Source of the DNA: Macrostomum lignano
Lineage: Eukaryota
Direction: 5' to 3'
DNA: 64,000 bases
NCBI GenBank assembly: GCA_002269645.1
Contig: NIVC01000426.1
Span: forward strand, 310,001 to 374,000
Part shown: positions 2,109 to 61,900 of the stretch, piece by piece
How positions within the stretch are numbered: the stretch's first letter is position 1
Layout of the letters: every line of letters begins with the position of its first letter
Notes under the pieces: generated by a model
What the model was told of the DNA's origin: nothing
Database searches by the model: none
Seen by the model: only the letters and a program-made list of their open reading frames with translations
Made by a program: the position numbers and the translations under genes

Positions 2109-15041
<12,933 letters not shown>

Positions 15042-22480: not shown

Positions 22481-22510
22481 GGTTAGGGTTAGGGTTAGGG
22501 TTAGGGTTAG
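22481..22510 (+). repeat. Interstitial (TTAGGG)n tract, ~5 copies
   Basis: GGTTAGGGTTAGGGTTAGGGTTAGGGTTAG seen directly. Confidence 0.9.
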
Positions 22511-26402: not shown

Positions 26403-27660
26403 TGTGTCAGTAGGTGAAAGTGTTAGTAGGTGAAAGTGTCAGTAGGTGAAAGTGTTAGTAGATAAAAGTGTTAGTAGGTGAAAATGTCAGCAAGTGAAAG
26501 TGTCAGTAGGTGATAGTGTCAGTTAAATGAAAGTGTCAGTAGGTGAAAGTGTTAGTATATGAAAGTGTTAGTAGGTGAAAGTGTTAGTTGGTGAAAGTGT
26601 CAGTAGGTGAAAGTGTTAGTAGATAAAAGTGTCAAGATTCAGTGTCAGTAGATAAAGTGTCAAGATTTAGTGTAAGCAGATAAAGTGTCAAGATTCAGTG
26701 TCAAGATTCAGTGTCAGCAGATAAAGTGTCAAGATTTAGTGTCAGCAGATAAAGTGTCAAGATTTAGTGTCAGTAGATAAAGTGTCAAGATCCAGTGTCA
26801 GTAGATAAGGTGTCAAGATTCAGTGTCAGTAGATAAGTGTCAGATTCAATATTAGTAGATAAAAGAGTCAGAATTCAGTGTCAGTAGGTAAGGTGTCAAG
26901 ATTCAGTGTCAGTAGATAAAGTGTCAAGATTCAGTGTCAGTAGATAAAGTGTCAAGATTCAGTGTCAGTAGATAAAGTGTCAAGATTCAGTGTCAGCAGA
27001 TAAAGTGTCAAGATTCAGTGTCAGTAGATAAGGTGTCAAGATTCAGTGTCAGCAGATAAAGTGTCAAGATTCAGTGTCAGCAGATAAGGTGTCAGGATTC
27101 AGTGTCAGTAGATAAGGTCTCAAGATTCAGTGTCAGTAGATAAGGTGTCAGCATTCAGTGATAGGGGGGCCGTAGCCCAGCGGTAGCGCAGCTGCTCTGG
27201 TGTGCCAGCGACCCAATTCCAAGTGCAGTCACATTAATTTGGGGCTGAATTGGAATCTCGGCTTGGCTCTGCTCGTGCAATTAACGGCCTTGAGAGCCAA
27301 CCCCCCAAGGCGCAGTGAAGTGTACATGCCTAACGATAAAATAAAGTTAGGGCCGCTGTACACTCCTGTGTGAGTGTGTGCCTGCGTACGTATCCGCGCG
27401 CTTGTATACCTGCTCAGGGGAGTCGGCGAAATGGGCAGCAATGCCTCTCGCCGGTTGTGTGCCTGTCGCTTAAAGTGCGCCAGGGTGCACACAACCCCCT
27501 GCCTCTAATAAAAAAAGGTATCAAGATTCAGTGTCAGTAGATAAGGTGTCAGGATTCAGTGTCAGTAGATAAGGTCTCAAGATTCAGTGTCAGGAAACAG
27601 TGTCAGGAAACAGTGTCAGGATTCAGTGTCAGGATTCACTTGTCAGTAGATAAGTGTCAG
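26403..27660. repeat. Compound array: 16-bp (GTGTCAGTAGGTGAAA)n grading into 28-bp (GTGTCAAGATTCAGTGTCAGTAGATAAA)n, interrupted by a SINE
   Basis: Seen directly. Confidence 0.92.
27163..27517 (+). mobile_element. tRNA-derived SINE, family A, copy 1
   Basis: tRNA-like head (GGGGCCGTAGCCCAGCGGTAGCGC), ~100-bp core nearly identical to 34905-35000, A-rich tail. Fragments of the 3' part occur near 3550-3600 and 60815-60900. Confidence 0.8.
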
Positions 27661-31994: not shown

Positions 31995-32735
31995 GGTCTG
32001 TCAGGACCGTCAAAAAACAGTCAAAAAATAACTTTCAATAACTGACGAGAGTTTTGTATTAACAGAATGTGCAGTAGATAGGTACAACGAAATAATTTAT
32101 CAAGTCACATTTAATTTATCAGTTAGCAAGGTCTACAACAGTATTTTAACATACTTATTTAAAAGCTGATAATGTACATGATGGCTAAAAACAGAGTCAG
32201 GTTACTGCAAATACTTTGCATGGTTTCTACACCTTAACAGCTGAAAAAATCCAAGAAAAAAGGAGCTTGGGTTAAACTAGGCATTTAAAACATACGCTCG
32301 TACTGCTACTTATAAAGTAGCAAGTAGTAAAAGCAACGCAAAAATGCAATTACACGAATAAATTAATGAGTTTATTTTGTAGTTCACTTCCTGCCGGCAG
32401 TGGCAGCCTGTTCAATCAGAGGCTCCCTCTTGTAGGCAGCTGGCTGCTTGGCTCGCTGCTGTTGCTGGGCGGTCACGGCCGCCGCCCGGTCCGCCGCGAA
32501 CCGAATTCGATCAGACGGGGAGCGGGGAAATTTGGCGACGGTCCACGCCGTCGAGTCTGTCGCGTCGAGGACGAATAGCCGATAGATTGGACGAAGCCGC
32601 GGCAATATTTCGCTGAGTTATTGTTGAGGAGCGGTTGATGCGTTCGATTCAATTTCTAAGAAATGGCAGTTATTTACTAACATTCTCTTTCAATCTTTCA
32701 CAATGTTTTATTTACAAACTTTTGTGTGCAATAAA

Positions 32736-34082: not shown

Positions 34083-34745
34083 TCAATCCTCACCTGACGG
34101 TCCGCCAATGATTTCCTGAGCTCGAATCCGACATGCTAACCGGCCAGCAATGGCCGATCGGCCGCAGACAAACCGGACAGAGTCCAACGGCCTCGGCGCG
34201 TCCTCGTCGGGGCCGGGCAGGTAGGCGGCCGGATCGAAGCTGCCATCGGGCGGGGCAGCGGTAGTTGGCAGCAGCCAGGTGAGCACGCAATAGCCAGTTA
34301 GGTACTGATCCTGCAGCAGGCCGCGCAGCAGAGCATAGTAAGCCACCCCCTGGGACTGTTTGTCCCTCAGCTGGACAACATCGCCAATGGCATAGCGGAC
34401 GCCGGATTGGACTAAACTGTCCGAGCCGACCGGCGCTACGCAGGCCGGCCCGGATTTCATCGCCCGGATGGCCGATTCTGCGGCCGCGGCGGCTGCAGCA
34501 GCTGCAACGGTGGCCTCTGCCGAATCCGACGCCGCCTGGTGCCTGCCGCCGGCGCCCCGGCCAGCCGCCGACTTTGGACTCTGCTGGATGGCGGCTGGAG
34601 CCAGCTCGGCTAGAGCCATCCGGTACTTATACGGCTCCTTGCGCACCCGGGAAGTTCGACGCAGTGGCGACAGGCTGGTTGAAGTCGGACTCGCGACGGC
34701 AGCGGCATCTTTTTTATCATTGCCAGCTTCCAACTCGCCAACCAT
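34083..34745 (-). CDS. GATAD1: GATAD1/ODAG-like chromatin protein (C-terminal conserved domain; no GATA finger visible)
   Basis: YAIGDVVQLRD...YYALLRGLLQDQY...LTWLLPT...FDPAAYLPGPDEDAPRPLDSVRFVC closely matches the GATAD1 C-terminal domain as recalled. A possible donor at 34093 could link to a last exon beginning at 32655. Confidence 0.8.
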   Translation of the reverse strand: MVGELEAGNDKKDAAAVASPTSTSLSPLRRTSRVRKEPYKYRMALAELAPAAIQQSPKSAAGRGAGGRHQAASDSAEATVAAAAAAAAAESAIRAMKSGPACVAPVGSDSLVQSGVRYAIGDVVQLRDKQSQGVAYYALLRGLLQDQYLTGYCVLTWLLPTTAAPPDGSFDPAAYLPGPDEDAPRPLDSVRFVCGRSAIAGRLACRIRAQEIIGGPSGED

Positions 34746-34839
34746 AGCTTTGCACTCAAGGTAAGCATGAGTAGAATGAGCAGTTTAATACTTAGGTACC
34801 TGCTAGGTTTGTCTGTGTCATAGGTGTGTGCCATGACAG

Positions 34840-35168
34840 AGGGGTCCTAGTCTAGTGGTCTGGCGCTGCACTCTGATGTGCCAGCGGCCCAGGCTCGATT
34901 CCAAGTGCAGTCACATTAATTTGGGGCTGAATTGGAATCTCGGCTTGGCTCTGCTCGTGCAATTAACGGCCTTGATGGCCAACCCTCAAGGTACAGTAAA
35001 GTGTACATGCCTAACAGTAAACACTGTGCATGTTTACTTGTGCACATGACTGCATATGTATCTGCACACTTGTGTGACTGCTCAGGGAAGTTGGCAGAAT
35101 TGTGTGACAATTTTGCTTAACATGCACCAGCACCAGAATGCATGCAGACTCTGTCTTTAATTAAAAAA
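34840..35168 (+). mobile_element. tRNA-derived SINE, family A, copy 2 (3' half CpG-decayed)
   Basis: A-box-like TAGTCTAGTGG and B-box-like GGCTCGATTCC; core shared with copy 1 at 27163; A-rich end. Confidence 0.8.
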
Positions 35169-38100
35169 TCAAAGAAGACATATCAAATTAAATTTTGGCA
35201 TTCTAAATTTGGACCCCAGATGCCAAAATTTGACTTAAATTAGATATAAATTTGAGTTTAATCAAAGGGAAATATCATCCCTAACCTTAGCTTTTACACT
35301 TTGTATCTGGCTTAACTCATCTTTTGATCTTATTGTGGGCATGCTCTATAAAGCTTCAATTGTCTACAATACTTGGGTCAACTGATTAAAAAACCTACTG
35401 ACTAACCTCTATTGAACCTACTTAACCTCTATTGGCAATTGCTATAAAGATTTCAATGAAGCCACTCTAGTCTTGCCTTTCTATGGCCATCCCAAATAGG
35501 CTCTCAAGAACAAAAAGTATAAATTATTTTGCTTAACACAAAATCAAAATGGTCTTTTTTGTACTACTAAGTTGTCTAAAATCTTAAATTCCCCCTTTTG
35601 CTCTATATCTATATGTTAATGTTGCTGATTAATTCAATTGCACAGATGACCAATGTCTCTAAAGTAAGAAAAACAAAAAGATAGCCTATATATAATAACA
35701 TTGGCTTAAACCTAATGCCATTCAAAGATACTTTTATAACTTAATACTTATACTCACTGTAAAAAACCTATTGATTGCTTAAAATCCTTAATAAATGTCA
35801 ATATGACTTTAAAATCATTAATCCTTAAGATTATTACACATTAAAGCTAAATCACATAGTCCTAATACATAGCTTACATATAATGGTATGGCATTAGTCA
35901 TGATCTTTGCATATTCTAAGAAGGTAAACTCACTATATTTTTATATTTGCTTTTCTTATTAATGTGATACCTAAATATTTTATTAAAATTAGGGTAAATT
36001 TTAAATTAGTTTCCTTTTTAGAAGTTGCTAAATAATAAATATGTATCTAGTATATTTCAACTTTCTCTATTGACAAGGCAAATATGACATATTTTTGTGA
36101 GGCAACATTTAGTATATGGTATTTGACACAATATAACCCTAAAACATGTGTAAATATTTTTCTTTTTCTAATAATCTAGTTTTAACTTCATTTCCCCCTT
36201 TTTATTGTCTCTTTTTTGTTTTTTCCTTTTTCCTTAATATTTTGTTGCCTTTTCTATTTCTTGGTTCTGGAAAGAACTAGGCCTAATTTTGCAACTTACT
36301 TTGGCTAGCAACTTTTTAAAGAATTTTCAAATTTTCAATATATGTATGTATGTATGTCAAGAAAAGCTTTTATCAATTTTTTGACAATTGATATAATATT
36401 TTGTCAAAATGACTTTTTACTAAAAATGACTAGGTTAGGTAGGCCTACTATAATGATACAAAGTAACATTACCAAAATCAAATTCTGAAAATTACTAAAA
36501 ATCTATAATTAACTAGAGGGTAAGCCTTTTTTAAAAGAAAAAAAGCAGAAACTTCTGTGTGAATAAAGTAATTATTATTTATCTGGTAATACCAAGTAGA
36601 TAATATTTATATATTTGCTTGGAAGTTAAAATTAAAGTTAACTTTAATTAAAGTTAAAGTTAAAAAGTAACTGGTACTTTAAAAAGTTGTTGGTCCTTTT
36701 TAACTTTAAAGAGCCACCATTATAAAAGTCAATTTTCAGATATTGATTCTTTCTCTTTGCAAGTATTTATAGAGATAATTTTTGTCCAATAGGTATAGAT
36801 ATCATATAGGTATCACAATGAATAGAATACTTTAGGAGACTTTTTTGTGTGGGTTATTCTTGTTGCCCTACTACAAATAATTCCTGTAGTATTATGCTAG
36901 AGTTTTATAGCAGCTATACTTTTATAGTAGTGTAGTGTAAGTATACTTTTGTACACTGCTAACTCATTTAAATCAATGATAATCTTCTGGCAGCCTTGGA
37001 AATACCAGTTGACAAATAAGAAAAAAATGCTTGGACAACAAATGGCTGGAATTTGACAAACAGACCAATGTACAAGACTTTAAATAACTTAATGTTTCAC
37101 AATTCACAAATGTAGCTTCTTAATATATTGCTAGTAGTCTTACCAATAATTACTTCATTCTATGATTATATAATGCTTAAAATGTGGTTTAACTTAAAAA
37201 TTAAAACTACCTGATCTAGGAATCTAGGATCACCTCTTTTCACCTTTTTATTAATGTGCTACAAATATTTTAGTGAATTTTTTGTGCTTTTGAGAAATAT
37301 TTATTCACTAGTATTAAATTGGCCATTTGACACCTAAAATTTCATTTTCAAGTACCAGAGGACCAGACTTATCAAAAAGTAACTTTCTGTTACCCAAGTC
37401 TAGCATTCTAAAAAAGGAACTGGAAAAAGTACCACTTCAAAAAAGTAACTTTGTGTCAAAAGTATACATGCGCAACAGTCGGCCAAGTTGGCTGATCCAG
37501 CTGACTGATTTGGTGGCCAACCAAGGTAAGTCACAAAAATGCCCACCCAAATAAATACTATAGTAGTACTAAGTAGATAATGAGGCATTTTGCCTTAAAC
37601 AGACAGTCATAGTTACTTCTGCTGTTTACCCAAAGTTGCATTAATTTTGCTTTAGGGTTTCTTTTACATGTAAGTCACATTTTGGCCAAAAACTGTCACA
37701 TTTTTTGTTAAAACTAAATTGCATGGCTAACCAAATTTTGGAGGTTGTGCAAAAATGGCTAGAAGCACCAGAACTTTGCCCAACACTGAATATAATTAGG
37801 TCTAGTTAGGGATTTATTTGGTATTTTGCTATCTCAGGATCCCAGGATTTAATCTCTGAATTTTGGCTAATCCTAAGATTCATTCTTGAAAGTAGAAAAA
37901 ATACTGATTTTTAAGCTGCCAGGTTGAAATTTTAAGGCAAAATGTGTGCTAAACATTTTTTGCCTCTTTTTTGATTGTTATAGATTTAATGATATATTTG
38001 TAAATGAAAAATAACATTATCTTATGATATATTTAAGTAAGTAATTACTTAAATGACTTAAATGACTATAAGTATAAAAGTATTAATTAGATATAAAGAT

Positions 38101-39089
38101 AGCAAATCAAATATCAAAATTTTAAGTGGAATAAATTTGATACTTAAATTCCTAATGCTGGGATTAAAAAGATACTATGCAATATGAGGCAATTAATAGA
38201 AATTAGTGCATTATAATAAATAATAACTAGTCATTTTGCCTATAAACCATTCTGGCCATGGATACTTTATCCCCATGCTTTTATTTTCAATTTGGGTGAC
38301 AAATCTTATTCTTTTAGTATTTCTGGCTTTAGGCCTACCTTGCTATAACCGAAACCTTTTTTCACCTTTTGATTATTCAAATTGGCTTTTAATTATCACA
38401 CTTTTGAAAAGAATGACTTTTTAAAAACTTGTAATAATTCACAATTGCAATAAACAAAATTGCAATAAGACAATTGTTATAGCAACAATTTAGATCATAT
38501 TTTTCATACAATAAAACGAAAAATTATTGAAAAAGACAATAAAGATACATATACGGCTGTATCTCAATATTACATAATCATCATTTTTGCTAAAACACCT
38601 ATAGCCAAACTGGTTTATGGGCAAAATAGACTATGGGCAAAATAGTCTAGGGATGAAATATCCATAGCCAAAACAACTGGAATTCTAATAAACTAGTTGT
38701 AAGCCTAACTATGTTCATATTACAACACTTTAAAAATAACTTGAAATAAAATAGAAAAAAATTGTCTTAGCATCCTGGGATTGCAATCCCTACTAGGCCT
38801 AGTATTTCTTTAGAATGTTTATAACTTATAAGAACGAAGAACCTATGAAAAAGAAACTTCCCTAGCCTAAGTGTAATAAATGAGATTTATTTTAGTCACG
38901 TGACTGCTCTCAGCCAATAGCAACTTACATGTGTGTGTTGCCAATAGAAACGGCTGGGTGATTCCCAAAGTTGCACATGTATGAATATATTAGGGCTTAG
39001 AGATGCTAATATGAACAATTGTATTGTAATACATAAAACTAAAGAAAGCATCTAATGCTAGACAAAAACAATAAAATACTATTCATCCC

Positions 39090-39375
39090 GGCAATGGCTA
39101 GAGTTCCGGCATCGGAACCCATTTTCTAATGGCTACGGATCCGGCAGTGCCATTATAATATAGATGGAATATTATATTTTTCTTTCTACATGTGGCTGAT
39201 ATTGAGATTTTGTTCTAGATTAAAATTTAAGACAATATGATAAGATTCGGGACGAGATGCTTCTAATATCCAGACTTAGATATGTTCTTAGCAGTCTTTA
39301 CATGCTTCTATATGGCACTGCCAGATCCCTAGCTGTTAGAAAACAGGTTCCGGTGCCGGAACTCTAGCCATTACC
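39090..39375. mobile_element. Mutator (MULE)-type MITE, ~65-bp TIRs, 9-bp TSD
   Basis: Left arm GGCAATGGCTAGAGTTCCGGCATCGGAACC is inverted at the right end; flanks are ATTCATCCC and ACTCATCCC (8/9 identical). Confidence 0.8.
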
Positions 39376-42300
39376 ACTCATCCCATACTAGACAATTAAA
39401 ACCAACATTCATCTAGTACTATACAAAAAACAAACATTAATTATATGGTACTGGACAAAAAACCAACATCATTTCTCCCATACCAAATGAATTGAATAGG
39501 CCTACTCAAGTCTATTTTATTTTATTTTTTTACTTTTATATTCTTAGTTCACTTTTTAAATTAGGCAAAAGTCTAGAGAATATATGTTAGTATTTTATGT
39601 ATAATATACTATACAATAAGATTATCTGCCTAGATCCAGTGGACTAATGCCTAAGGTTGGACGGCCTAAGCATAACTGTATAAGTTAACCTTTTGCTAAT
39701 TTGCTGCAAAATAATATAACAGCAAATAAAAAATCTGTTTTTAGATCTTCCTTAGCACAATTTCACATTAAAAGTGTTAATGATAATTGTTTTCTTGCAC
39801 TACACGACACGAGACTCATGAAAGCTTTGCTAAGGCTAGTTGGTCAAATATCTAATCCAAACCAATCCATGGATCGGTCACGCGCTAACAAAGTTTAGCT
39901 AAATTGAATCTGAACTGCGTTTGTACTTCTGAGAAATGTGCTTATTAGAACACAATTTAGAGAAATAGAAAACTTTTATCTGCTTGAGTCTACAAGTCTA
40001 CTCGCATGCTTAACAGTATAAAAAGAGGCAACGAATATTAAGAAACTTGACAAAAAGTTTATTAAAACGGTCTACAGAAATTCAACATTCAAAATTCAAA
40101 TTCAATAAACCAGAGAGCTAGGACTTTAAAGTTAAAGTTAATAATAATTCGTCACGAATTTTTGTTTTGCTTATTATTTTTTCCTGACTTTCAATACATC
40201 ATGAAAATATACACATGAACCATGCTGAAATACGGCATATATAGACAATGCAATAGGCCTATACTGTCTATTTCAAATCAGGATAGGGCCTACGCCTACC
40301 TAGCTTAGCTATACTTATATACCAATGGCAATAGGCCTAGGGAGGGGTGTGAGTGTAGAACTTAGAACTATAGTTAAATTATAGGCCTACTTATATATAC
40401 TTAAGTCAGACAAGATTCCTATCAGATGATACCTAAATACTTTTGCATCATATAAAAATAAGCATAGTAGAAATCAAACTTCCAACTATAATACTACTAG
40501 GCCTAGGCTTAATAGTAATAATACTAAAATATACATGTAGGTATAGGCCTAGCCATAGCATAAGTGCTTTCCTTTATTCATCAATCCCACTATTATTATA
40601 AAACTGACCAAATATTATTTAAGGTAGGCCCTATCTTAATGCTGCTATAGCCTATAGGATAGATAGATATTTTAGTAAATGAATATTTCACTTTCAGTTA
40701 GGCCATAAAACTGTAAAAGTAGCTTTTTGGTGAAGGCCAAGGGTTTTATAATTATACTCAATATATATCATTCCTAGGTCAACACCCTATAGTTATCTTA
40801 CTTATCTTAATAAAATCCAGCGTATTAGTAATGGACTAATGGTAAAATGTTTAATCTTACTAAGATTCCTACTAAGATTCATAGGCCTAGTAAGATAAAG
40901 CTGACTTGGTACTTCTTACTTTGCCTTTGCCATGGAAAATTCCAGTGCACACAAAGGGTCCTTTGTGCACTTGGTGCATAATCATAGCGTACATTGAGGT
41001 CCCTGGCACATGTGGTGCACAATCATGGCGCATACTGAGGTCTCTACCTAGCGTATGTGGTGTATAATTGCAGTACATACGACGTATAAGGTCCTTGACA
41101 TATGCGGTGCTGTGCACAACTTTGGTGCATAAAGAATCAGAATAGAATCTTTATTAACATAAAATTAGTATAGCATATTGAGTCTTTATGAATTCTAAGA
41201 ATTTTGTAAATTTGTAATAAAATATGTAATTTATATAAATTATGTAAATTAAATAAAATATATAAAATAAGGGCACAGACATGGCACATAGATGGTACAC
41301 AAATGGCACATAGACTGCACACAGATTGTCCCAAAAAAAATATTCTTGCGCATACTATGCCACCTTCCTAGCTATGGTGCCTTTGTAAGCTAATCTTGGT
41401 AGTCTTAGTAGTAGTAATAAGAATATAAATACTATCAAGATTATTCTGTTTTTTTTTTGCATCAAATATTGATATATGCTTGCTAATGAACAAATAACTA
41501 TTATGCCTATATATCACAACAATAGATTATATTTATTACCCCAACCCCAATCCCTGCCCATCCAGTCTTACCATTAAATAATGTGCAAAAATCTTGTAGT
41601 ATAGGCCTATTTAGCCTATAGATTACATTTCTTAAATCAGTCACATAGTTATAGATTACCTGAGATCCCCTTAATATTTAGTAAAGAGTAGTTCTTTATA
41701 ATATAATGCTTTTTACATTGCAAAATTTTTCATTTGAACAGTGACTGGGATTTATTTTCATTTTAAACTCAATAAATTAACATGTTGCAACACTATACTA
41801 CAGCAGTGAGAAAACATTAACTCTTCAGACTTTACATAGGGAAAATCTGGGGATGGACACAATGAGGAATAAAAAAACTATAGCAACAAAAAAATTTGGA
41901 ATAGGTTATAAATTTATAATAAATTTTTAGTTTTTTTCCAAGTTACATGGTATAAAAAAGAAACCACACAATTATGTACAGAAAACATGGAAGACAAAAG
42001 GTTTATTTCAAAAATGTCATATATTAATCAAAAGAAATTTTTTAAATTTTAAAGGACATTAAAACAAAGTGAATATTAGTACAATTCTTTTTGTCTTCTA
42101 GCTGTCTAAATGTATGATTCCAATTAATGATTCATGCATGATTCCTTATACAAACTAGCACTAGGAAGACCCAAGATACAGTAGCTAGAGCACTATCATT
42201 GCTGATAGTACTGAATAACATTTGCTGCTGCTATAATCAGCATTATGACTAGCAAGGCTGTAAATAGAGAGTAAATTGCAATGTAAGAGATAATAAATAG

Positions 42301-43509
42301 ATAAAAATTACAAAATTTTATAATTATATTACAATCACAGTTACAGCTAAAAAAACCAGGGCCTAAGGCAATCAAAATTAACTGCAAAAAACTAAAAACT
42401 TAATAAACATTATTTTTGATTAGAACTAATAAATAATATAAAAAGGTAAATCTTTTTAAAAGGATACACAAAAGAATTTGGGAGCAATAAATTGTAACCA
42501 AGCTAGCTTGCAATGAAATCATATCTATTATTTTAGAGCTAAGCCAAGAGAAAAAAGAGAGATAGATAATCATACATTTTATAGAGCCAAAAAGCCCATA
42601 CTATTATCAACTTTGTGCAATTAAACTATTATTAATAATTTACTTACTACCAACTCTGCAGTTGAAAAAATATATATTAAACATCAGTGGAATATAAAGA
42701 AGCATGTTAGATTTACATTGTATGTGTAATGTGTATACTAGGAATAAAAATTGTGTTGCTTAGCAATTAAAAACTGGAATATATAAGTATGTGTAATTTT
42801 CTATTACTACTACTAATTGCAAAACAAGTAGTAAGGTCCTTGCTAGGAATTTTATTATGTGCCTAATACATTTTTCCATTACAAATCAAATAGAAAAGTA
42901 CTAAACTAAGCCTAGCTGGAATAGAGTATTCTACAGGAATTCTCAAAACACAATGGGAGTTATATTGCATGGCACAATTTTAGCAGTTCCTAACACAATC
43001 CAATCCTCTTTCCCTTATAGTTAGACCTCCAATTTTTCTAATCTTGTCTTAACAATCATTCATATATCCTAAAATAACCAAGTATAGATAAAGGAAACAT
43101 AATGAAAGAGTTAGCCCAGCAATATGTGAGAGGAAATAAGCAAGTGTTAAGCTTTTTGTTTAACAAAATCCTTTCTTGATTGGGTATTAATGTCCTGCAT
43201 CTTCTCTCTGCAGTATACAAGCCCTGGAGCTGGGGTGCTCACCAAGGACAAGTGACTGTTTTTTTTCATTTTATTTGCTTAAATATACCAAGGATCTTAA
43301 AATTACCGGCCTCTTTTCTGGCAGTGATGGCCTTCTCAATCAGTGAATGTTAATTGTAAACTTATTATTTCTTTTGGCCTATTATATTTTAGTTCATAAA
43401 ATTCAATTCAAATTATTTCTTTAAGGAAAGTCAGGAAAATGAAAGCAAAGGCAAACGTTCATATTTTATCTTTAATAATACAAAATTATGAAATTATAAT
43501 TTATTAATC

Positions 43510-43912
43510 AATCTTTGCGCGACATGTTTTGCCGAAAAATTGGCATCTTCAGGCAAGGCAATAATATAGTTTCAGAAAGATGGTAATTTTTTAAAGTCTA
43601 GTAGGCCAAAAAGATTGTAAGTATGGGTAACCGAGTTAGATGGCCCTAAATAAGAGGCAAGTGCATAGAGTCAGAACACCCTTAGATGGACACTCGCCCC
43701 TCTACCACCAAGTTGGATGTTCATGGTAGGCTTTAACTGTTTAATGTACAATGCCTCAAGAGTAGAAAACTTAAAACTCTGCCAATTACGATCAATAATT
43801 TCAAATTTCTTAGCATTTCTAACTTTAGCACATTGATTGTACATCAGGAGGTGGTCGTACACAGCACAAGCTCTTGTACAATGCTCCTTTACCCTTGTGT
43901 GTAGGTGCCTTA
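43510..43912 (-). mobile_element. Penelope-like retroelement remnant (GIY-YIG endonuclease C-terminal part)
   Basis: RHLHTRVKEHCTRACAVYDHLL...FEII...LEALYIKQLKPTMNIQ matches the PLE GIY-YIG consensus pattern. Confidence 0.8.
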
Positions 43913-44698
43913 AATTAAATTTCTTAAATGTCTTTAAGGTATTATATTTTCCTCAATATAATTCAAATATGTTTAATTATTAAAAAAGTGGACATATACA
44001 GAAATGGAAAAGGTTGCCAATAAAACTGCCAAAATGGGAGTTTGTATTGTTTCTAATTCTTGTGTGCAAGGTCTTTTCTTTCGAGTTCTTTGTGGGTGCA
44101 GGCAGTGTAAACTGTGTATTGAGAATTCCTGTAGAATACCCTGTTCCAGCTGGTTTGGTACCTTACTATTTGATTTGTAATGGGAAAATGTGGTATGTGC
44201 ACAGTAGAATTTCTGATGGGTACCTTACTACTTGTTTTGCAGTTGAAAATTGGAGTATGTAAGTAATTTTCTATTACTACTCTTGTGAATTTTTAACAAC
44301 TCAATTGATTGTATGTAATAGAGAGGCAACTGTTTGAGTCACCAATGCATCACATGAGTTTTAAAATCATAAAAGAGTGCTAAAAATGCCTATGTGATTC
44401 TAACTCATAAAGTGATGCATATGTGTTTTATACGCAACTCTAGCATGCCTCAGATACCATTCTCTCTGTTGCCCCAGAGTCGCAAACAATAAAACGCCTC
44501 ATATTGACTCAGATGACTTTTTAGAAACTTGTGCCGTGACATTTTGTGGTTTTAGAGTTGTAATTTAACAACTCTGAAACGACTCTGGGACAAGGTAACA
44601 TGGACCGATATTTCTGCTCATAAATCTGTAAATTCATGCGCTTGCCAATCTCCTTTGTCGGCATTGTCAGCAGCAGCAGCAGCAGAAGGATTGCAGCA

Positions 44699-46247
44699 AT
44701 GTCGGCATCAACTGGCATCCGGCCAATTGTATTCAGCGGGCCTAGCGGCAGCGGCAAGTCTACACTAATCCAGCGTCTGATGGAGCGTCATCCAGGCTGC
44801 TTTCGGTTCTGCGTGTCGCACACAACCAGACAGCCGAGAGCCGGCGAAAAGCACGGCCAGCACTATTGGTACGTGACCGAGGCCGAGATGCTGGCTGACA
44901 TTGATGCCGGCAAGTTTATTGAGTCCACCCATTTTGCCGGCAACCGCTATGGCACCAGTTACAAAGCCGTGACGGATGTTATCAATAGCGGACAAATTCC
45001 CGTGCTAGATGTGGATGTGCAGGTTTGTTCAGGTGTTAATACTGATTTGTTATTGCTTTTAAAATTTATCAATTTCGGCTGCGCAAGTGGCATTTAACGT
45101 ACTCAGTAATACAAATTCAATGTGCGTTTAAACAGCGTATTTATAGTTTTTGGGCAATTAACCATTTTAAGCATACGAAATGCCAGTCTAAATTAGTTAG
45201 CTGATATGCATAGTTAAGTCTAAATTGACATTAATTCGCAAAAATGGAAAGTTTTCTTTTAGTTTTTAGTCTAACACGCCCGTGTGCCTGCTCAGATAGG
45301 GAACGCTTGAGACGGAAGTGACTCCCCCAACTGAGGCTTCCAGAGTCGTTTCAGACGCGTTGCAGATGACAAAGGTCAAACAGGAAAGAAGTGATTCTAA
45401 ACGACTCTAAAACAACAAGATGTTACGGTACAAGTCGCCAAAAAGTCGTCAAATAGTCGCCCCACAATCACTTTGAAACGTTTTATATTGTCTGCGTCAG
45501 TGCGTCACTTCTGAGGCGTTCTGGACGCGTTACAGAGTCGTTACTACCGGCCTTAAACAGACTGCTGGATCGTCATTTCCGGGCGAATAGAAAATGCTAG
45601 AATCACTTCTTTCCTGTTGGACCTGTGTCATCTGCAACGCGTCTAAAACGACTCTGTGGCTACACAAGTGACTCCGGGACGCTTCTTGGCCTCTATAACG
45701 TTTTCATCGGGCTTTGGCGGATTAGCCCAGCCCATTAGCCTTAAAATGGATTTAAAGATTCAAGGTCGGTTTTGCTATCCCGGAATTATCGAAAATCTTG
45801 TGCATCTGCATATAGTAAGGAAACGAACTGGCCTGGGCCTCAGTTTTGGCGGAGTGCCTCCTGTGTGCTCTGAGTGGCCTATATGATTATTGTAGCATAA
45901 TATACTACCCGTGCCGTCAACTGAGAACCGTACCGAATTCCTAATCGCCACAGGGCGTCAAGAGTTTCAAAGCCGCCAAGCTGCAGCCGCCGCCAACCTA
46001 CGTGTACATCAAAGCGCCCAGCATGACAGACCTCGAGCAGCGACTCCGAGCCCGCTGTACAGATGACGACGAGAAAATCCGCCTCCGTCTGGCCGAAGCC
46101 GAGGCTGGCAACGCCTACGCCGATCAGGCCGGCGCCTACGACGTCGTGATTGTCAACGATAATCTGGACGCCGCTTTCGCCGAGTTGGACAAATTTCTGG
46201 CCGACGACGTGGCCCGCGCATTGGCAGCCAAAGCATCCGCAAGCTGA
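44699..46247 (+). CDS. GUK1: Guanylate kinase
   Basis: Exons 44699-45022 and 45954-46247 (phase 0). P-loop GPSGSGKST; VSHTTRQPR, YGTS, VLDVDVQ|GV, LEQRLRAR, DVVIVNDNL motifs. Confidence 0.95.
45341..45656. repeat. 59-bp inverted repeat pair in the GUK intron; dispersed family also near 44470-44590 and 62410-62625
   Basis: 45341-45399 matches the reverse complement of 45598-45656 with ~3 mismatches. Confidence 0.8.
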
Positions 46248-49625: not shown

Positions 49626-51121
49626 AAGTTGTAGTGGAAACTCAGGTTTAAGTTACAGGAAAAATAAGTGGATTACAATAATAATCAGATAATTTTTAAA
49701 GCACTCTGAAAGTGAGTTTTACACCTGAATCTTAGGTATCATCTTCTTATTATTTTATCATAACAGACATACAGAAGACCATGTGAACATCACAGTAGTC
49801 TCATGCCAAATTTATGCAACAAAACTTATGAATGGTTGAGTAGTTTGATGCTTGCTTGTCTCTAATATGTTTGTTATAACTAGGTTATGTAATTGGTATA
49901 ATTATAGTGCTTGGTTAAAATATTGAATAAATATCGTGAATCTGTCACAGCCAATCTTATTGGTCAACCTTACGCTTTTGTCCCTATTAGTCCACAAATA
50001 TCCCACAATATCCTAAGCTAAGTTACGGTTATGAATAATTAACTTGATCACATTCCCGCACTTGAGTGACAGGTGAACTACATTGTCATACGTTTTCAAC
50101 TCTCACAAATTGTGTTTAAACCGTCTTTTATAAATACACGAGTATACGATTTAATCAGTGGAAATATTTCAATCAATATCGATCTAATTTTGTTATAGTT
50201 TTGCTGATATCGAGGAATCGCGCCTTTTTAAACGCGCACTTAAATGGCTTGTTTTTTAAAATGTTTTAACTTCTCTCGCATTAATCCTCAATTATTCAAT
50301 GCTCAAACTCTTAGAGTCACAAATTTGAATTAGTGCTGCGAAATACGATTTAATAATAATTATTTGAGACATTTTAATTTCCAATCTGGTCAATTGAGTA
50401 CACTGTGTACTTTTTATTGCTAATTTGGTACTTTTGTACTGTTGGATTGAACCTAAATGGGCTTTAGGTATGAAATGTAAGGCACCGGTACATTTTGTGA
50501 TGAATCTTCTAATAGAACTTTAGTTTTATTGTTTATTGTTTGTTTATCTCCGCTATGTATATTTTGTCTCGTGTTTTATCTTAAATAGCTTAGTTCGTCA
50601 GAGCCTTGTTCAAGCTTGCTTTCGGGTTTTCAGAATTTTCTAATCGGTTGTGCTTGTTAAAGCAATTATTTGCTTTCTTCTTCTGGCTGTCTCTGCTGCT
50701 GCTGCGGTTGAACTCAACAAAAAGGTCAGCTTAGCTTACCTATTAACGCTTCTAGCTATTAAAAAATACATAAATATAAAAATTCGATTTACAACTTGTT
50801 GCTTACATAATCTATTTAATTAAATTGAAATGTTGGACTTGATTGAATAATTTCTGTCTGGAACTCTGGTTAATTTTTCTTTTCTGTAGTCAAAGTTTTG
50901 TAATTATAGTTAGCTCTTAGTTGTTGTAGAACCAAAATGAAAGTGCATTAGTGACTTATCACTATCGATAATTACGGTATTAGTGTTTACAAAATTATTT
51001 TTAAAGTTATTCACGACCTAGGTAGGACTGCGATAGATAATATAATTATTTCATTAAAATTCAGCATTAGGTGTAGAAGTATAGTTCTGTGGCTTCGTCA
51101 CGATCGTGAAAAATTAATCAT

Positions 51122-51716
51122 TATTGTCTACCTCCAAAACCAAATACACAATCTATCATTATTGTCTACCTCCAAAACCAAATACACAATCTATCATTAT
51201 TGTCTACCTCCAAAACCATATACACAATCTACCATTATTGTATACCTCCAAAACCATATACACAATCTACCGTTATTGTCTACCTCCAAAACCATATACA
51301 CAATCTACCATTATTGTCTACCTCCAAAACCATATACACAATCTACCATTATTGTCTACCTCCAAAACCATATACACAATCTACCGTTATTGTCTACCTC
51401 CAAAACCATATACACAATCTACCGTTATTGTATACCTCCAAAACCATATACACAATCTACCATTATTGTCTACCTCCAAAACCATATACACAATCTACCG
51501 TTATTGTCTACCTCCAAAACCATATACACAATCTACCGTTATTGTATACCTCCAAAACCATATACACAATCTACCATTATTGTCTACCTCCAAAACTATA
51601 TACACAATCTACCGTTATTGTCTACCTCCAAAACTATATACACAATCTACCATTATTGTCTACCTCCAAAACTATATACACAATCTACCATTATTGTCTA
51701 CCTCCAAAACCATATG
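51122..51716. repeat. 38-bp minisatellite (ATTATTGTCTACCTCCAAAACCATATACACAATCTACC)n, ~15 copies
   Basis: Seen directly; an inverted copy lies at 53358-53497. Confidence 0.95.
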
Positions 51717-52449
51717 CAAATTTACCATTGTTTCAGCACCGTGAATGTGCGTAGATTAAGCCACAGGCGAAAACGCAAGATGTGGAGGGGTAGTTGGGAT
51801 AGTGAAGTTAGAAGCACTGGTAAGGCTGTGCCAGAGACAAAACTGATGGACTGGGGTGGGGTGGGGCCTAAATAACATGGAGGCGCTAGCTAGGAATACA
51901 GAGAGAGAGCTTTACCTCCGACGCCTCAGCTTATTAAACATGGCTCTCATTAACTGGGGCCATTCTTCGGTGAATTCGCTCAACGGTGTGACAAGTAGTG
52001 AGTTAAGCCTGATATCGGAACTGAGTTCCAAGGCCCACCAGGATTGAATGGCTGACCAACTCCTGGTGATATGGACCATTTGCCGGAGCTTCCAGTTGAC
52101 GATGCGACAATCGGTGGCCACGCCACGGTGAATACTTAGTCTTTTCTAATGGAGCATACGGATGAGGACTGCGTCACTTGGTCATCCTAGCCACCCTGAT
52201 CGCTCTCTTTCTCTCAAACGTTCTCTCAAACTGCCGTTTTGAGCGGCCTGAATCTTCAACTTTTAATGCCTTTCCGATTGCTGACAATTGAACACGCATA
52301 TGTCGACTTCAGCTGTTGATTTTCATTTCGTTTGTTGCAAGTTACCGATTCCTAATATGTCTATGGCCCGCACGCCAGAAGAAATATAGCGACTGTTTTT
52401 GCCACCCTGAAATAATGGCAAAATGTAAGAAAGCTGAAATAATGGTAGA

Positions 52450-53357: not shown

Positions 53358-53497
53358 AATGGTAGATTGTGTAAATGGTTTTGGAGGTAGACAATAACGG
53401 TAGATTGTGCATATGGTTTTGGAGGTAGACAATAACGGTAGATTGTGTATATGGTTTTGGAGGTAGACAATAACGGTAGATTGTGTATATGGTTTTG
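53358..53497. repeat. Inverted copy (~3.7 units) of the 38-bp minisatellite
   Basis: GGTAGATTGTGTATATGGTTTTGGAGGTAGACAATAAC repeats. Confidence 0.92.
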
Positions 53498-58916: not shown

Positions 58917-61900
58917 ATGGAAGGCATTGAAAATCCAACCGACTTAACAGATGCTGGCACCCAAAATGGGAATGCAAAGCACTATCAGGTAGGTATATAC
59001 TATTACTAGGGCTACCGGCTAAGCTATTTATTTTTTCTTAAAGAAATATAAAGGAGAATAGCAGTATATATTTTTATTCTGCTCTTTAACTAGGCCTAAT
59101 CCTTAACTTAGGCCTAATGCTTTTTGTGCATATACCATAGCCTATAGGCATAGGGCCTAACATAACATAGCCATATTACCATATGCTACATTAGGGTTGG
59201 CTGGAAAGGATAGACCTAGGGCTAGGTAGTAGATCTAAAGACACAGGTACAATGCCAGGTTGCTTACTGAAATAACTAGGTATTTTGTTACATTATATAT
59301 TTATTATAGGCCTAGGCAGGCTTTTTTAGATCCAGTGTTCATCTTTTGATATATTATGCCTTTCTTATTGCTCTATTGATATTCATAGAGTTTTTTGTCC
59401 AGAAAATTAGGATTCTATATGGATTTTTTATTATATGTACATTTGCATGTCTTGTGCCTAAAAACCATTGAAGTGGCACAGCTTGGCTCTTTGTTTTTAT
59501 GAGTCTATTTTATCATTCTTAGTTGACTGTGTAACAAATATTTGTAACAGAGATGATAAAATAGATTCATAAAATCAAAGATTCAAGCTGGGTCATGCAT
59601 TTTTATGATTTTTAGGTATAGGAAATATATGTAAAATAAAAAATTAACATAGAATCCTACTTCTACACAAATCTAATCTTAATTTAATAGCTTTGCATGT
59701 TCACACTTGCTTAATAATGTCTAGTTTAGTGATCAATGCTATTAGTCACTATATACTTTTGATATATCAAAAGTTGATACTAGTTTTACAAACTTTTAGC
59801 TATCAAAACAAATTTCTTTTAGGTTTAAAAGTTCTCTATTTTTGGAGTTGCCATTTTATTCATATTTTAATAACTCTGTATAACTTTTAAATCTTACTAA
59901 CTTTATTACATCAACATTAGTAAGTTAGTACAACAATTTATGTTAAAATATTTAGTCAAATTAAGCTGAGTTTTTAAAGTTTACTAGACTTGTGTAGGTT
60001 ACACAGGTATTTTTGAATAAAATTGCATATGAAATATGATATTAAATATATAATAGAATCATAATTACTACTACTACTTGAAAACTCAATGAGTAGTCTT
60101 GTTGCTAAATAAATTTTTATTATTTGGTCTTTAAAATAAATATTTGATTGTAATAATTATTAATAACATGTAACCTTTTTATCATTTTAGGATATTTTCA
60201 TTGGCTGTCTTCTGGCTGTCATAGGAAATCTTTTAATCAGTGTTTCACTCAATATTCAAGTAAGTCTGCTTTAGAATATTCTTTTTTATAAATATAATAA
60301 GTAAAATGTACTATTAGATAAGCTAGTTGAACTCAGTGGTGGTCAGTGGGCCATCAAAAAGAGCAAGCAAGGGTCAAGACTCAAGAAGACACCAAACTGA
60401 TCATTTCTCACAAGCTTCTCAAATCTTCACTTCGCTGCTCGCAGAAGTACACGCACAACCGTGATCAACAGCTAACAGTCGGGAATCGAACTCACTACTT
60501 GAAGCGGCCCCTCTGGTGGGTGGGCATAGTGCTCATGGTGCTTGGCGAGTTAGGTAACTTTGCCGCCTATGGCTACGCGCCTGCCTCCACCGTTGCACCA
60601 CTTGGCACTACAACCGTCATCGCCAATATGTTCATCGCTGTGCTGTTCCTGCGCGAACGCCTTCGTCCTGAGGATCTGTTTGGCAGCTCTTTGTCTATCG
60701 TTGGCGCTTTCCTCATTGTCAGCTTCTCCAAGAGGGTGAGCTGGAGGGGGGCAGAGCAGATCAATAGAAAACACGTTTGATTCGCGCACCAGGAGCATTC
60801 ATTTGGGGCTTTTGTACATGCCTGACGATTAGAAAGTCAGGGCCGTTGTACACCCTGTGTGAGCGTGTGTATGAGTGCTATGCCTGCGTACAGTACGAGT
60901 ATTGGAGCGCTTGTTTGTGCTGTGGAGTCAGCGGAATGAGCAGTTCGATTGTCTCAGCGCTGGTTGTGGGACCATGCCGTCAAAGGCGTTGCTCCAGGGT
61001 GGCCACAAATCTACGGTCATTAATATTCTGAGAGGGGTCCAACGTCTTAGGACTTTTTACATGACTCTTTTTAGCAGCTAGCAAGAGTAACAGCAACTGA
61101 TTTATTTCATAGCGACTTTACATCTATGGTACAAGTTTCATTTGCTTCTGCTTGTGTGGCACCCTTGTGGCAACCATGACTGCCTTGAGCAGGAAGTGCG
61201 ACGGGTTCTTGTCCATAAAATGCCAAGGCAGGCGTATGCAGATGCCATTGATGACATGCTTACCTGCTACTGAGGACATGCCACTGAGGAAGATATTAGG
61301 ACTTTTTTTGAAAGACAACTGACTTAATGTTTCCTGGTGCTTCATATGCAGCATCCAAGTTTCTGTTCATGTATTAAATGCAGTACCCCACCCACTGCAG
61401 TTAAGGAGGCATAACTTTGAAAAGTTCGTGATATTTTAAAAAAATATTTCACTGTGTCATTTGTAAGTAAAGCCGCTATGAAATAAATCTGTTGATGTTA
61501 CTATTTTGGAATGTTAAAGAGTCATGTGAAAAGTCCTAAGACTTTTAAGCCGTAAGTCCTAAGTTGTATATTGAGTGTGAACTGCAAAATGGAACTTCAA
61601 ATTTTAATAGGAAATTTTTGGTTTCAAATGTACGTACGTAATTTCATAAAAGCATCCGGCCCTGAAAGGCTTCCATCTAGTCTAAGATAGTAAATCTCCT
61701 TTGAGCTTTGGCATCAAAGCCTCCTTTAAAGCTATGGCGTAACCCTAGCTCTCCCTTTGTTGCTTGACCCTTCGAATCTCGGCAACCGCCCTATGAGCCC
61801 ACGGCATTTCAGCGATCTAATTTTGGGATTCCGTATAGACTTTTCCGATGCATTTTGAACGAAATTTCAGACTGCACTACTATAATCAGTAATAATCTGA

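What the first reader, a model, noticed from the sequence alone, without database searches (positions are those of the whole stretch)
34840..43500. Sharply bounded CpG-void domain whose edge is recorded inside a single SINE copy
Seen: aligning SINE copy 2 (34840) to copy 1 (27163), about five CpGs are kept in 34860-34975. All ~12 alignable CpGs after ~34990 are TpG, CpA or TpA (e.g. CGTACGTATCCGCGCG vs CATATGTATCTGCACA; GTCGGCG vs GTTGGCA). I found no CG at all in ~35000-37465 or ~41360-43300, whereas similarly AT-rich DNA at 50000-50900 has many. Established: germline 5mC deamination produces this CG-to-TG/CA pattern. Inference: a long-standing methylated domain starts ~230 bp after the donor-like site at 34761, next to a protected promoter, in what looks like a flatworm, a group usually regarded as weakly methylated.
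Basis: partly seen in the sequence, partly recalled or inferred. Interest (0 to 1): 0.75.

Follow-up and report, generated by a model that had tools for sequence, protein, structure and literature searches.

The report
CpG-free DNA blocks in a flatworm
In a stretch of Macrostomum (flatworm) genome whose exons, satellites and much AT-rich DNA keep normal CpG, a few AT-rich non-coding blocks have lost nearly every CpG through C-to-T changes, which is the footprint expected of long-term germline DNA methylation confined to those blocks.

Summary
Unique DNA at 34968-38349, 41350-43306 and 59017-60432 holds 2 CpGs where 146 are expected. It holds 220 GpC. Exons, tandem arrays and equally AT-rich DNA, including a second M. 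lignano locus, sit at CpG o/e about 1.

The loss happened in place. Void-resident copies of three unrelated interspersed repeats have lost 29 of 29 CpG dinucleotides present in their copies elsewhere. 28 became TG, CA or TA; one became TC.

The most likely cause is 5mC deamination in discrete germline-methylated blocks. M. lignano is reported to keep DNMT1 and DNMT3. No methylation data were available here, so this step is inferred.

The only homology-supported gene at the left edge, a BAH-domain gene, is on the minus strand. The void lies upstream of its ATG, and the "donor" at 34761 is a chance-level motif. The edge inside the SINE is confounded by the SINE's conserved core and variable head and tail.

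A second void does begin 28 bp after a verified first-exon donor, in a NIPA-like gene. The 34840-43500 domain is two voids with a partly decayed middle and a graded right edge. The palindrome TAGGCCTA is strongly over-represented and lies almost only in void-class DNA; this is unexplained.

The parts
34746..34837 (.). 5' flank of the BAH gene's ATG. It is CpG-free and rich in TG/CA, and is the probable true left end of the void.
   Evidence: 0 CpG against 4.1 expected; TG+CA 17 against 11.6. ATG position from tblastn with P0001.
34838..35169 (+). SINE copy 2. Head with an A-box-like site (34848-34858) and a B-box-like site (34892-34902), then a core to about 34990; these keep 6 CpGs. The tail, about 34991-35169, has none.
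   Evidence: Alignment to copy 1: 12/12 copy-1 tail CpGs lost. 10/10 consensus CpGs lost, against 25/39 kept in four copies outside voids. CpG>TpG 13/24 against 2/28 in control copy c3 (Fisher p=2e-4). Motif positions.
34968..38349 (.). Void A: unique AT-rich DNA (GC 0.29) with 2 CpGs in 3382 bp.
   Evidence: CpG o/e 0.03, GpC o/e 1.48, 108 GpC. P(0) 9e-18 for 34968-37470.
37464..37751 (+). Copy of an interspersed repeat that holds the only two CpGs of void A (37471, 37480). It has lost 9 of at least 11 ancestral CpGs.
   Evidence: 87% identical to L001 21616-21907. 9/9 L001 CpGs are TG (6) or CA (3) here, and the 2 CpGs here are TG in L001.
38350..41349 (.). Partly depleted middle (36 CpGs, o/e 0.46) with the same dinucleotide signature as the voids. 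It includes a MITE-like element, 39090-39375, with 64-nt inverted arms that carries 8 CpGs, and a 528-bp CpG-free run, 40293-40821.
41350..43306 (.). Void B: 1957 bp of unique AT-rich DNA with no CpG.
   Evidence: 0 CpG against 41 expected; 66 GpC. P(0) 2e-13.
42815..42952 (-). Void-resident arm of an inverted duplication. Its partner at 44113-44244 lies in the graded right edge.
   Evidence: Partner-to-void differences: C>T 16/51 against T>C 4/81, in all contexts (Fisher p=8e-5). This shows general AT drift in the void in addition to CpG loss.
43307..44635 (.). Graded right edge upstream of the guanylate kinase gene (CpG o/e 0.41).
34089..34745 (-). Exon 1 of the BAH-domain gene (ATG at 34745). 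GC-rich, CpG 69 against 69.3 expected.
   Evidence: 98% identity to M. lignano A0A1I8HF37. CpG counts.
44696..45019 (+). First coding exon of a guanylate kinase gene. CpG 24 against 25 expected.
   Evidence: Pfam Guanylate_kin 2.5e-34. CpG counts.
27163..27515 (+). SINE copy 1, the reference copy, inserted in a minisatellite. It keeps 14 CpGs in its tail and lacks the B-box-like segment.
59017..60432 (+). Void C: intron 1, exon 2 (60191-60259, GC3 0.26) and intron 2 of a NIPA-like magnesium-transporter gene. It starts 28 bp after the exon-1 donor (exon 1 58917-58988) and ends 12 bp before exon 3 (60445).
   Evidence: 0 CpG against about 29 expected. Adding exons 1 and 2 extends the Pfam NIPA match to profile position 2 and raises the score from 95 to 117.5 bits. 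GC3 6/23 against about 0.65 elsewhere, binomial p=1.6e-4.
59328..59645 (+). Void-C copy of another interspersed repeat. It has no CpG.
   Evidence: 83% identical to L001 7366-7677, which lies in CpG-normal AT-rich DNA. 8/8 L001 CpGs are TG (4), CA (3) or TC (1) here.
36278..41609 (.). Twelve exact copies of the palindrome TAGGCCTA scattered in void-class DNA. Three more lie at 59091-59314 in void C.
   Evidence: 15 in the window against 1.0 expected, none outside void-class DNA. In L001, 4 against 0.24 expected, 3 of them in its two small voids.

Best explanation
The window comes from Macrostomum lignano or a very close relative or homeologue. Most of its DNA behaves as unmethylated, with CpG o/e about 1.

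Embedded in it are discrete AT-rich, mostly non-coding blocks in which CpG mutates to TpG/CpA roughly 10-20 times faster than other cytosines mutate. Old sequence in these blocks has reached a nearly CpG-free, 29% GC equilibrium. Repeats that inserted later are caught at stages of decay:
- the SINE tail has lost 12 of 12 CpGs;
- the repeat at 59328 has lost 8 of 8;
- the repeat at 37464 has lost 9 of 11;
- the MITE-like element at 39090 is still CpG-bearing.

The most likely cause is constitutive germline CpG methylation of these blocks by the DNMT1/DNMT3 system that this species retains, followed by 5mC deamination. The blocks stop within tens of bases of GC-rich coding exons, which are spared.

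Shown: the depletion, its CpG specificity, its direction and its regional restriction. Inferred: that methylation is the cause, and what targets it.
For: 1. CpG specificity. 2 CpG against 220 GpC in 6.76 kb; o/e at most 0.049.

2. Direction and in-place origin. Void-resident copies of three unrelated repeat families have lost 12/12, 8/8 and 9/9 of the CpGs seen in their copies elsewhere. 28 of the 29 became TG, CA or TA; one became TC. Non-CpG C>T runs at 15/67, 15/77 and 10/97. Four SINE-tail copies outside voids polarise the SINE changes.

3. Regional restriction.
- Exons have CpG 69/69.3, 163/166, 53/51, 24/25 and 19/21 observed/expected.
- Tandem arrays outside voids show CpG-site transitions 6/308 against 59/1357 at other G/C.
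- The 153-mer array 1-2 kb left of the edge shows 11/86 against 20/259.
- AT-rich DNA (GC 0.30-0.36) in a second M. lignano locus has o/e 1.1-1.3.

4. Fresh decay products. TG+CA is 27 and 20 against about 12 expected per 100 bp in the SINE tail.

5. Rate estimate, my inference. The void copy of the 37464 repeat lost 9/11 CpGs and the L001 copy lost 2/11, at about 4-5% non-CpG transitions per lineage. That gives roughly 18-fold hypermutability in the void and about 2-fold outside.

6. Replication. Small voids (568 and 833 bp) exist in the PacBio-based Mlig_3_7 contig L001, so this is not an artefact of one assembly.

7. Literature. M. lignano keeps DNMT1 and DNMT3 and has low global 5mC (PMC11292947, PMC9246332, PMC10658182). 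Low global 5mC is what one expects if the methylated compartment has almost no CpGs left to score.
Against: - No methylation data were available, so 5mC in these blocks is inferred, not shown.
- The depletion is stronger than in heavily methylated vertebrate genomes, where o/e is about 0.2 (my knowledge). It therefore needs an added factor such as AT-biased background mutation or weak T:G repair.
- The voids also show context-independent C>T drift, and an exon inside void C has GC3 of 0.26. CpG methylation alone does not explain either.
- The SINE's head and core have kept all their CpGs although CpG-free DNA lies on both sides. Under uniform domain methylation this needs a special explanation.
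- Sparing exons while hitting adjacent introns is the reverse of canonical invertebrate gene-body methylation.
- Only about 86 kb of this genome was examined.
Confidence: 0.7

Rival explanations
1. CpG is hypermutable everywhere in this genome. GC-biased gene conversion or selection rescues CpGs, and GC content, in exons, arrays and recombining DNA. The voids are recombination-cold, unconstrained DNA that has run to the mutational equilibrium.
For: The voids show general C>T drift in all contexts (16/51 against 4/81). An embedded exon has AT-rich third codon positions. Block edges coincide with exon edges to within 12-28 bp.
Against: CpG-site transitions are not elevated at all in tandem arrays or in diverged SINE tails outside voids. 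AT-rich intergenic DNA in L001 has o/e 1.1-1.3. Reported global 5mC is low. Gene conversion would have to cancel a 10-20-fold excess exactly, in every sequence class.
Confidence: 0.12
2. A CpG-directed mutagenic process acts in these blocks without stable 5mC. Examples are enzyme-catalysed deamination by a C5-methyltransferase or an AID/APOBEC-like deaminase recruited to them, or the relic of methylation that has since ceased.
For: The sequence records only the mutations, not the modification. The depletion is more complete than typical methylation equilibria.
Against: There is no positive evidence. The process must still be CpG-specific and symmetric on both strands: both TG and CA products are seen in every repeat. 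That is the signature of symmetric CpG methylation.
Confidence: 0.1
3. The CpG-less state is inherited, not acquired in place. On this view the void is built from CpG-poor repeat subfamilies or foreign DNA, and SINE copy 2 belongs to a CpG-poor subfamily.
For: Copies 1 and 2 clearly differ in subfamily. The head is 58% identical, and the tail has transversions and indels at about 9 times the core's rate. No genome-wide set of copies could be examined.
Against: Three unrelated families show the same total loss exactly where they lie in voids. The CpG-free tract continues without a break for 2.3 kb beyond the SINE. The void has no internal repeat structure. The 37464 copy still keeps 2 of 11 CpGs, so it is caught mid-decay.
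Confidence: 0.05
4. The pattern is a chance or composition effect of very AT-rich DNA, or an assembly or basecalling artefact.
For: None beyond the low GC content of the voids.
Against: P(0) is 1e-10 to 9e-18 per run. There are 220 GpC in the same DNA. Composition-matched controls in the window and in L001 are at o/e about 1. Voids also occur in an independent PacBio assembly.
Confidence: 0.01

Closest known systems
Vertebrate-type CpG depletion with unmethylated CpG islands
   Same: CpG-to-TpG/CpA decay of methylated DNA. The implied hypermutability is about 10-20-fold. Protected CpG-rich segments abut depleted DNA at gene 5' ends.
   Different: The proportions are inverted. Here the bulk of the DNA, including exons, satellites and much AT-rich spacer, is CpG-normal, and only discrete blocks of 0.6-3.4 kb are depleted. 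Depletion is near total (o/e below 0.05, against about 0.2). Coding exons next to the blocks are at o/e 1.0.
Mosaic (gene-body) methylation of invertebrates such as Ciona, oyster, annelids and honeybee
   Same: A DNMT1/DNMT3 toolkit. A bimodal CpG o/e landscape within one genome. Low global 5mC.
   Different: In canonical mosaic genomes the depleted compartment is the exons and bodies of broadly expressed genes, with o/e of about 0.3-0.6. Here every sizeable exon tested is at 1.0. The depleted compartment is AT-rich non-coding DNA: a gene-upstream spacer and a first intron, an embedded 69-bp exon and a second intron.
Fungal repeat-induced point mutation (RIP) and AT-rich isochores (Neurospora, Leptosphaeria)
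   Same: Sharply bounded AT-rich blocks made by C-to-T transitions, lying next to GC-equilibrated genes.
   Different: RIP acts on duplicated DNA and prefers CpA, which depletes CpA/TpG. Here the DNA is unique. (CpA+TpG)/(ApC+GpT) is 1.22-1.31. CpG is the preferred target: 13/24 against 5/29 for CpA. No RIP machinery is known in animals.
SINE families with a conserved central domain and variable head and tail (CORE-, V- and Deu-SINE type architecture)
   Same: The two copies share a 95.5% identical core of about 120 bp between a 58% identical head and a 70% identical tail. Tail-only relatives occur elsewhere in the window.
   Different: No assignment to a named family was possible. ARAGORN and Rfam do not recognise the head as tRNA-like.

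Membership tests
5mC-deamination CpG-decay domain (germline-methylated compartment) | CpG depleted relative to GpC and to base composition | tested here: met
   2 CpG against 220 GpC; o/e at most 0.049. CpG/GpC is 0.00-0.02, against 0.7-0.97 in controls.
5mC-deamination CpG-decay domain (germline-methylated compartment) | Directional CG-to-TG/CA substitutions in datable repeats, on both strands | tested here: met
   29/29 CpGs lost in void copies of three repeat families. Both TG and CA products occur in each.
5mC-deamination CpG-decay domain (germline-methylated compartment) | Excess of TpG/CpA | tested here: inconclusive
   Strong in the young SINE tail (27 and 20 against about 12 per 100 bp). 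Only 1.04-1.26 o/e in old void DNA, which overlaps some controls.
5mC-deamination CpG-decay domain (germline-methylated compartment) | The organism has maintenance and de novo CpG methyltransferases | not tested
   Literature only: DNMT1 and DNMT3 are retained in M. lignano (PMC11292947, PMC9246332).
5mC-deamination CpG-decay domain (germline-methylated compartment) | Residual CpGs in the domain are methylated in the germ line | not testable with these tools
   No bisulfite or long-read modification data were accessible.
Canonical invertebrate gene-body methylation | Exons of the methylated genes are CpG-depleted | tested here: not met
   Exon CpG observed/expected: 69/69.3, 21/20, 24/25, 163/166, 53/51, 25/23, 19/21.
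Fungal RIP | CpA preferred target; (CpA+TpG)/(ApC+GpT) below about 1.03 | tested here: not met
   The index is 1.22-1.31 in the voids. CpA>TpA 5/29 against CpG>TpG 13/24 in the SINE tail.
Fungal RIP | Acts on duplicated sequence | tested here: not met
   The void is essentially unique within the window.
tRNA-derived SINE | Internal pol III A and B boxes | tested here: inconclusive
   Copy 2 has TAGTCTAGTGG (34848) and GGCTCGATTCC (34892), which resemble the A-box and B-box consensus as I recall it. Copy 1 lacks the second.
tRNA-derived SINE | Head recognisable as a tRNA | tested here: not met
   ARAGORN finds no tRNA in the window. Rfam gives no tRNA match at E up to 1 in 34700-35300.
tRNA-derived SINE | A-rich 3' end and dispersed copies | tested here: met
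   A-rich ends at 27505-27515 and 35158-35169. Two full copies and three tail-only relatives occur in the window.

The most novel reading that the evidence does not exclude
The voids are a sequence-specified compartment. On this reading, AT-rich blocks marked by the palindrome TAGGCCTA are constitutively targeted for CpG methylation or another CpG-directed mutagenic state, with borders that exclude GC-rich coding exons to within 10-30 bp. That would be the inverse of canonical animal gene-body methylation, and the most complete CpG erasure described in an animal genome that is otherwise CpG-neutral. A variant of this reading is that the pol III promoter-like head of the SINE shields its own 5' 150 bp inside such a block.
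Probability: 0.13. Interest if true: 0.8.

Novelty: new variant of a known kind. Interest (0 to 1): 0.55.

Why it matters
Whether flatworms use DNA methylation, and on what, has been disputed for over a decade. Parasitic flatworms and planarians lack DNMT1 and DNMT3. [quoted passage not shown]

The mutational record here makes a concrete and cheap prediction. The methylated compartment should be a minority of discrete AT-rich non-coding blocks, not exons and not the repeats sampled here. It also offers a reason why global 5mC reads low: the targeted compartment has erased its own CpGs.

If confirmed, this would be an unusual "inverse mosaic" methylome. It would also give a tractable model species in which to ask what targets DNMT3 to such blocks.

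Tried and rejected
Searches for more M. lignano DNA that found nothing:
- Exact-protein look-ups of P0001 and of the 516-aa GPCR ORF were not on record.
- A metagenome scan for the SINE core gave no match.
- The guanylate kinase homologue search returned no Macrostomum protein; the best hit was 57-60% identical.
- Only the annexin search yielded a usable M. lignano contig, L001.
- L001 contains no copy of the SINE.

Literature and RNA-family searches:
- The Wasik et al. 2015 genome paper, which reported the bisulfite data, is not held.
- Rfam and ARAGORN gave nothing for the SINE or the window.

Ideas tested and dropped:
- The GC-richer patch at 37460-37530, with two CpGs and an AGGTAAG, might have been a hidden exon. 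It is a copy of an interspersed repeat, and the donor-like site is not conserved in the L001 copy.
- A pure "age" model, in which all non-coding DNA decays and voids are simply the oldest DNA. In-place tandem duplicates and diverged repeats outside voids show no CpG excess.
- RIP.
- Pfam does not support my impression that 57150-57900 (-) is a LINE reverse-transcriptase tail.
- A literature search for TAGGCCTA returned only primers and unrelated oligonucleotides.
Full report
**What the window is**

The ORF at 34083-34745 (minus strand) is 98% identical over 220 residues to the Macrostomum lignano protein A0A1I8HF37, a BAH domain-containing protein. The annexin exon at 54503-55057 is 95% identical to M. 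lignano A0A1I8IUY5. The window is therefore M. lignano, or a very close relative or homeologue.

Genes found in the window:
- a multi-exon CUB-domain gene whose introns are filled with minisatellites;
- a single-exon GPCR, a guanylate kinase, an annexin and a NIPA-like transporter.

Composition is a mosaic. Exons are 55-65% GC, and there are many tandem arrays and AT-rich spacers.

**The observation**

There is a further run at 37481-38349.

The other long CpG-free runs in the window are tandem arrays whose unit simply lacks CG. They carry no information.

I simulated a null that keeps local base composition and the window-wide CpG o/e of 0.72. The longest CpG-free run in 2000 simulations averaged 411 bp and never exceeded 1094 bp. 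P(0) for the four runs is 9e-18, 1e-6, 2e-13 and 1e-10.

Pooled, the three voids hold 2 CpGs against 146 expected (upper 95% bound on o/e 0.049). They hold 220 GpC.

Composition-matched controls are not depleted:
- 50000-51118 has GC 0.316 and o/e 1.11.
- The AT-rich 23-mer satellite at 16971-21564 has o/e about 1.9.
- In a second M. lignano locus fetched through an annexin paralogue (L001, GCA_002269645.1 NIVC01000576.1:122126-144280), DNA of GC 0.30-0.36 has o/e 1.1-1.3.

Two corrections are needed. 38350-41349 is only partly depleted (36 CpGs, o/e 0.46). The right edge is graded: 43307-44635 has o/e 0.41.

**Was the loss acquired in place?**

The SINE evidence. Copy 2 (34838-35169) aligned to copy 1 (27163-27515) keeps 6 CpGs in its head and core. 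All 12 alignable tail CpGs of copy 1 are TG, CA or TA in copy 2. Three further tail-only relatives in the window (60813-61008, 9644-9775 and 3545-3630) polarise the changes. At 10 consensus CpGs copy 2 has none, whereas the four copies outside voids keep 25 of 39. Per site, CpG>TpG is 13/24 in copy 2 against 2/28 in the equally diverged control copy c3 (Fisher p=2e-4).

The two SINE copies are not copies of one master. The head is 58% identical, the core 95.5% and the tail 70%. The tail differences include 8% transversions and several indels, against 0.9% transversions in the core. Methylation cannot make transversions or indels. The head, which lies outside the CpG-free tract, is as diverged as the tail. 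This is a SINE with a conserved core and variable ends. The abrupt change of divergence at about 34990 is therefore partly the SINE's own architecture, not a chromatin edge.

Evidence independent of the SINE. A BLAST of the window against L001 found two more interspersed repeats with one copy in a void.
- Window 59328-59645 (void C) against L001 7366-7677, which lies in CpG-normal DNA: 83% identity. All 8 CpGs of the L001 copy are TG (4), CA (3) or TC (1) in the void copy, which has none.
- Window 37464-37751 (void A) against L001 21616-21907: 87% identity. All 9 L001 CpGs are TG (6) or CA (3) in the void copy. The only two CpGs of void A (37471, 37480) sit in this repeat and are TG in L001.

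Across the three unrelated families, 29 of 29 CpG dinucleotides are lost in the void-resident copy. Non-CpG C>T differences run at 10-22%. I consider it unlikely.

From the 37464 pair I estimate, as my own inference, about 18-fold CpG hypermutability in the void copy and about 2-fold in the L001 copy. The void copy lost 9 of 11 CpGs and the L001 copy 2 of 11, at about 4-5% non-CpG transitions per lineage.

**Is the process regional or global?**

Outside the voids CpG is not hypermutable.
- Every sizeable exon is at expectation: 69/69.3, 21/20, 24/25, 163/166, 53/51, 25/23 and 19/21 observed/expected.
- In eight tandem arrays, CpG-site transitions are 6/308 against 59/1357 at other G/C sites.
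- In the four diverged 153-bp tandem copies inside the BAH intron, 1-2 kb left of the edge, they are 11/86 against 20/259.

A pure "age" model, in which voids are simply the oldest DNA, is therefore rejected. The process is confined to particular blocks.

Small voids (19143-19711 and 20665-21498) also occur in L001, which comes from an independent PacBio assembly. There they are interrupted by a CpG-bearing insert flanked by inverted-repeat-like ends, which I read as a transposon but did not test.

**Other features of the voids**

The voids share a dinucleotide signature: GpC o/e 1.5-1.6 and GG/CC about 1.3.

They also show context-independent AT drift. In the inverted duplication 42815-42952 (void) against 44113-44244 (edge), C>T is 16/51 and T>C is 4/81.

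The 69-bp NIPA exon embedded in void C has GC3 of 0.26, against 0.58-0.83 for the other coding exons (0.42 for the 72-bp NIPA exon 1) (binomial p=1.6e-4). CpG methylation alone does not explain this. AT-biased background mutation without a counteracting force, such as GC-biased gene conversion, may contribute.

RIP is excluded. (CpA+TpG)/(ApC+GpT) is 1.22-1.31, and CpG rather than CpA is the preferred target.

**Gene context**

tblastn with P0001 places the BAH gene on the minus strand, with exon 1 at 34745-34089 and exon 2 at about 32637-32387. Void A-B therefore lies upstream of its ATG, between it and the plus-strand guanylate kinase gene (ATG 44696).

The "donor" at 34761 matches a heptamer that occurs at chance frequency: 8 observed, 7.9 expected.

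The 92 bp between the ATG and the SINE already lack CpG and are rich in TG/CA (0 against 4.1; 17 against 11.6). The void probably starts at the start codon, and the SINE's head and core form a CpG-retaining islet. The head carries A-box-like and B-box-like motifs at 34848 and 34892. ARAGORN and Rfam do not call it a tRNA.

The BAH intron, which is full of tandem arrays, is not a void.

I found two unannotated NIPA exons, 58917-58988 and 60191-59259's correct coordinates 60191-60259. Adding them extends the Pfam NIPA match to profile position 2 and raises the score from 95.4 to 117.5 bits. Void C is then intron 1, exon 2 and intron 2. It starts 28 bp after the exon-1 donor and ends 12 bp before exon 3, which is at CpG o/e 0.9. 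The next intron (60780-63144) contains a SINE-tail relative (60813-61008) and is not a void (o/e 0.6-0.8).

**Mechanism and comparison**

The best explanation is germline CpG methylation restricted to these blocks, followed by 5mC deamination.

M. lignano is reported to retain DNMT1 and DNMT3 and to have low global 5mC. A 2022 review states that methylation patterns are unknown in free-living flatworms (PMC11292947, PMC9246332, PMC10658182). Low global 5mC is what a methylated compartment would produce once it had erased its own CpGs.

The pattern differs from vertebrate genomes, where the bulk is depleted and islands are spared. It also differs from canonical invertebrate gene-body methylation, where exons are depleted. 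Here exons are at o/e 1.0 and the depleted compartment is AT-rich non-coding DNA with o/e below 0.05.

Methylation itself was not observed and cannot be with these tools. What targets it, and why the SINE's 5' part is spared, remain open.

**Verdict**

I file this as a new variant of a known kind, with moderate interest. It turns the question of what DNA methylation marks in a free-living flatworm into a specific test that existing data types can answer.

Noticed in passing
window 36278-41609 and 59091-59314; L001 17581, 19213, 19403, 21438: The 8-bp palindrome TAGGCCTA occurs 15 times in the window against 1.0 expected, and every copy lies in void-class AT-rich DNA. In L001 it occurs 4 times against 0.24 expected, 3 of them in the two small voids. 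The flanks are unrelated, so these are not copies of one repeat. Exact copies (15) outnumber all one-mismatch variants together (12) despite the local C>T drift. Every AGGCCT in void-class DNA carries the T...A flanks; those in exons do not. No explanation found.
   Followed up: partly
window 15756-15844, 16106-16162 and 22481-22510, flanking 16971-21564: Short telomere-like arrays flank a 4.6-kb AT-rich 23-mer satellite in chromosome-end orientation: (CCCTAA/CTAACC)n on the left and (GGTTAG)n on the right. The satellite keeps its CpG in 120 of 123 units.
   Followed up: no
window 32566-32637 (minus strand): Relative to the M. lignano protein P0001, the second exon of the BAH gene carries a 1-bp frameshift. 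'SIGYSSS' and 'DATDSTAW' fall in different frames. This is either an assembly indel or a disrupted copy.
   Followed up: no
window 58917-58988 and 60191-60259 (+): Two small AT-rich exons of the NIPA-like gene that a plain ORF scan misses. Adding them extends the Pfam NIPA match to profile position 2.
   Followed up: yes
window 39090-39375: A MITE-like element with 64-nt inverted arms 88% complementary, possibly flanked by a TCATCCC-like duplication. It carries 8 CpGs inside otherwise depleted DNA and looks like a recent insertion.
   Followed up: partly
window 57478-58016; L001 2498-3019: A GC-rich (63%) interspersed repeat shared with L001 and CpG-normal in both (o/e about 1.0). One ORF reminded me of the C-terminal part of a non-LTR reverse transcriptase, but Pfam gives no hit.
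   Followed up: partly
window 2600-13000 (+): A multi-exon CUB-domain gene in which nearly every intron is occupied by a different minisatellite or microsatellite array (periods 4-35).
   Followed up: partly
window 51119-51729 and 53361-53498: Arrays of the same 38-mer in opposite orientation flank about 1.6 kb of unique DNA. This may be a transposon with terminal inverted tandem arrays.
   Followed up: no
window 34848-34902 against 27173-27215: SINE copy 2 has both A-box-like and B-box-like motifs. Copy 1 has a 6-bp deletion that removes the B-box-like GGCTCG. The shared core can fold as a hairpin (GATTCCAA...TTGGAATC).
   Followed up: no
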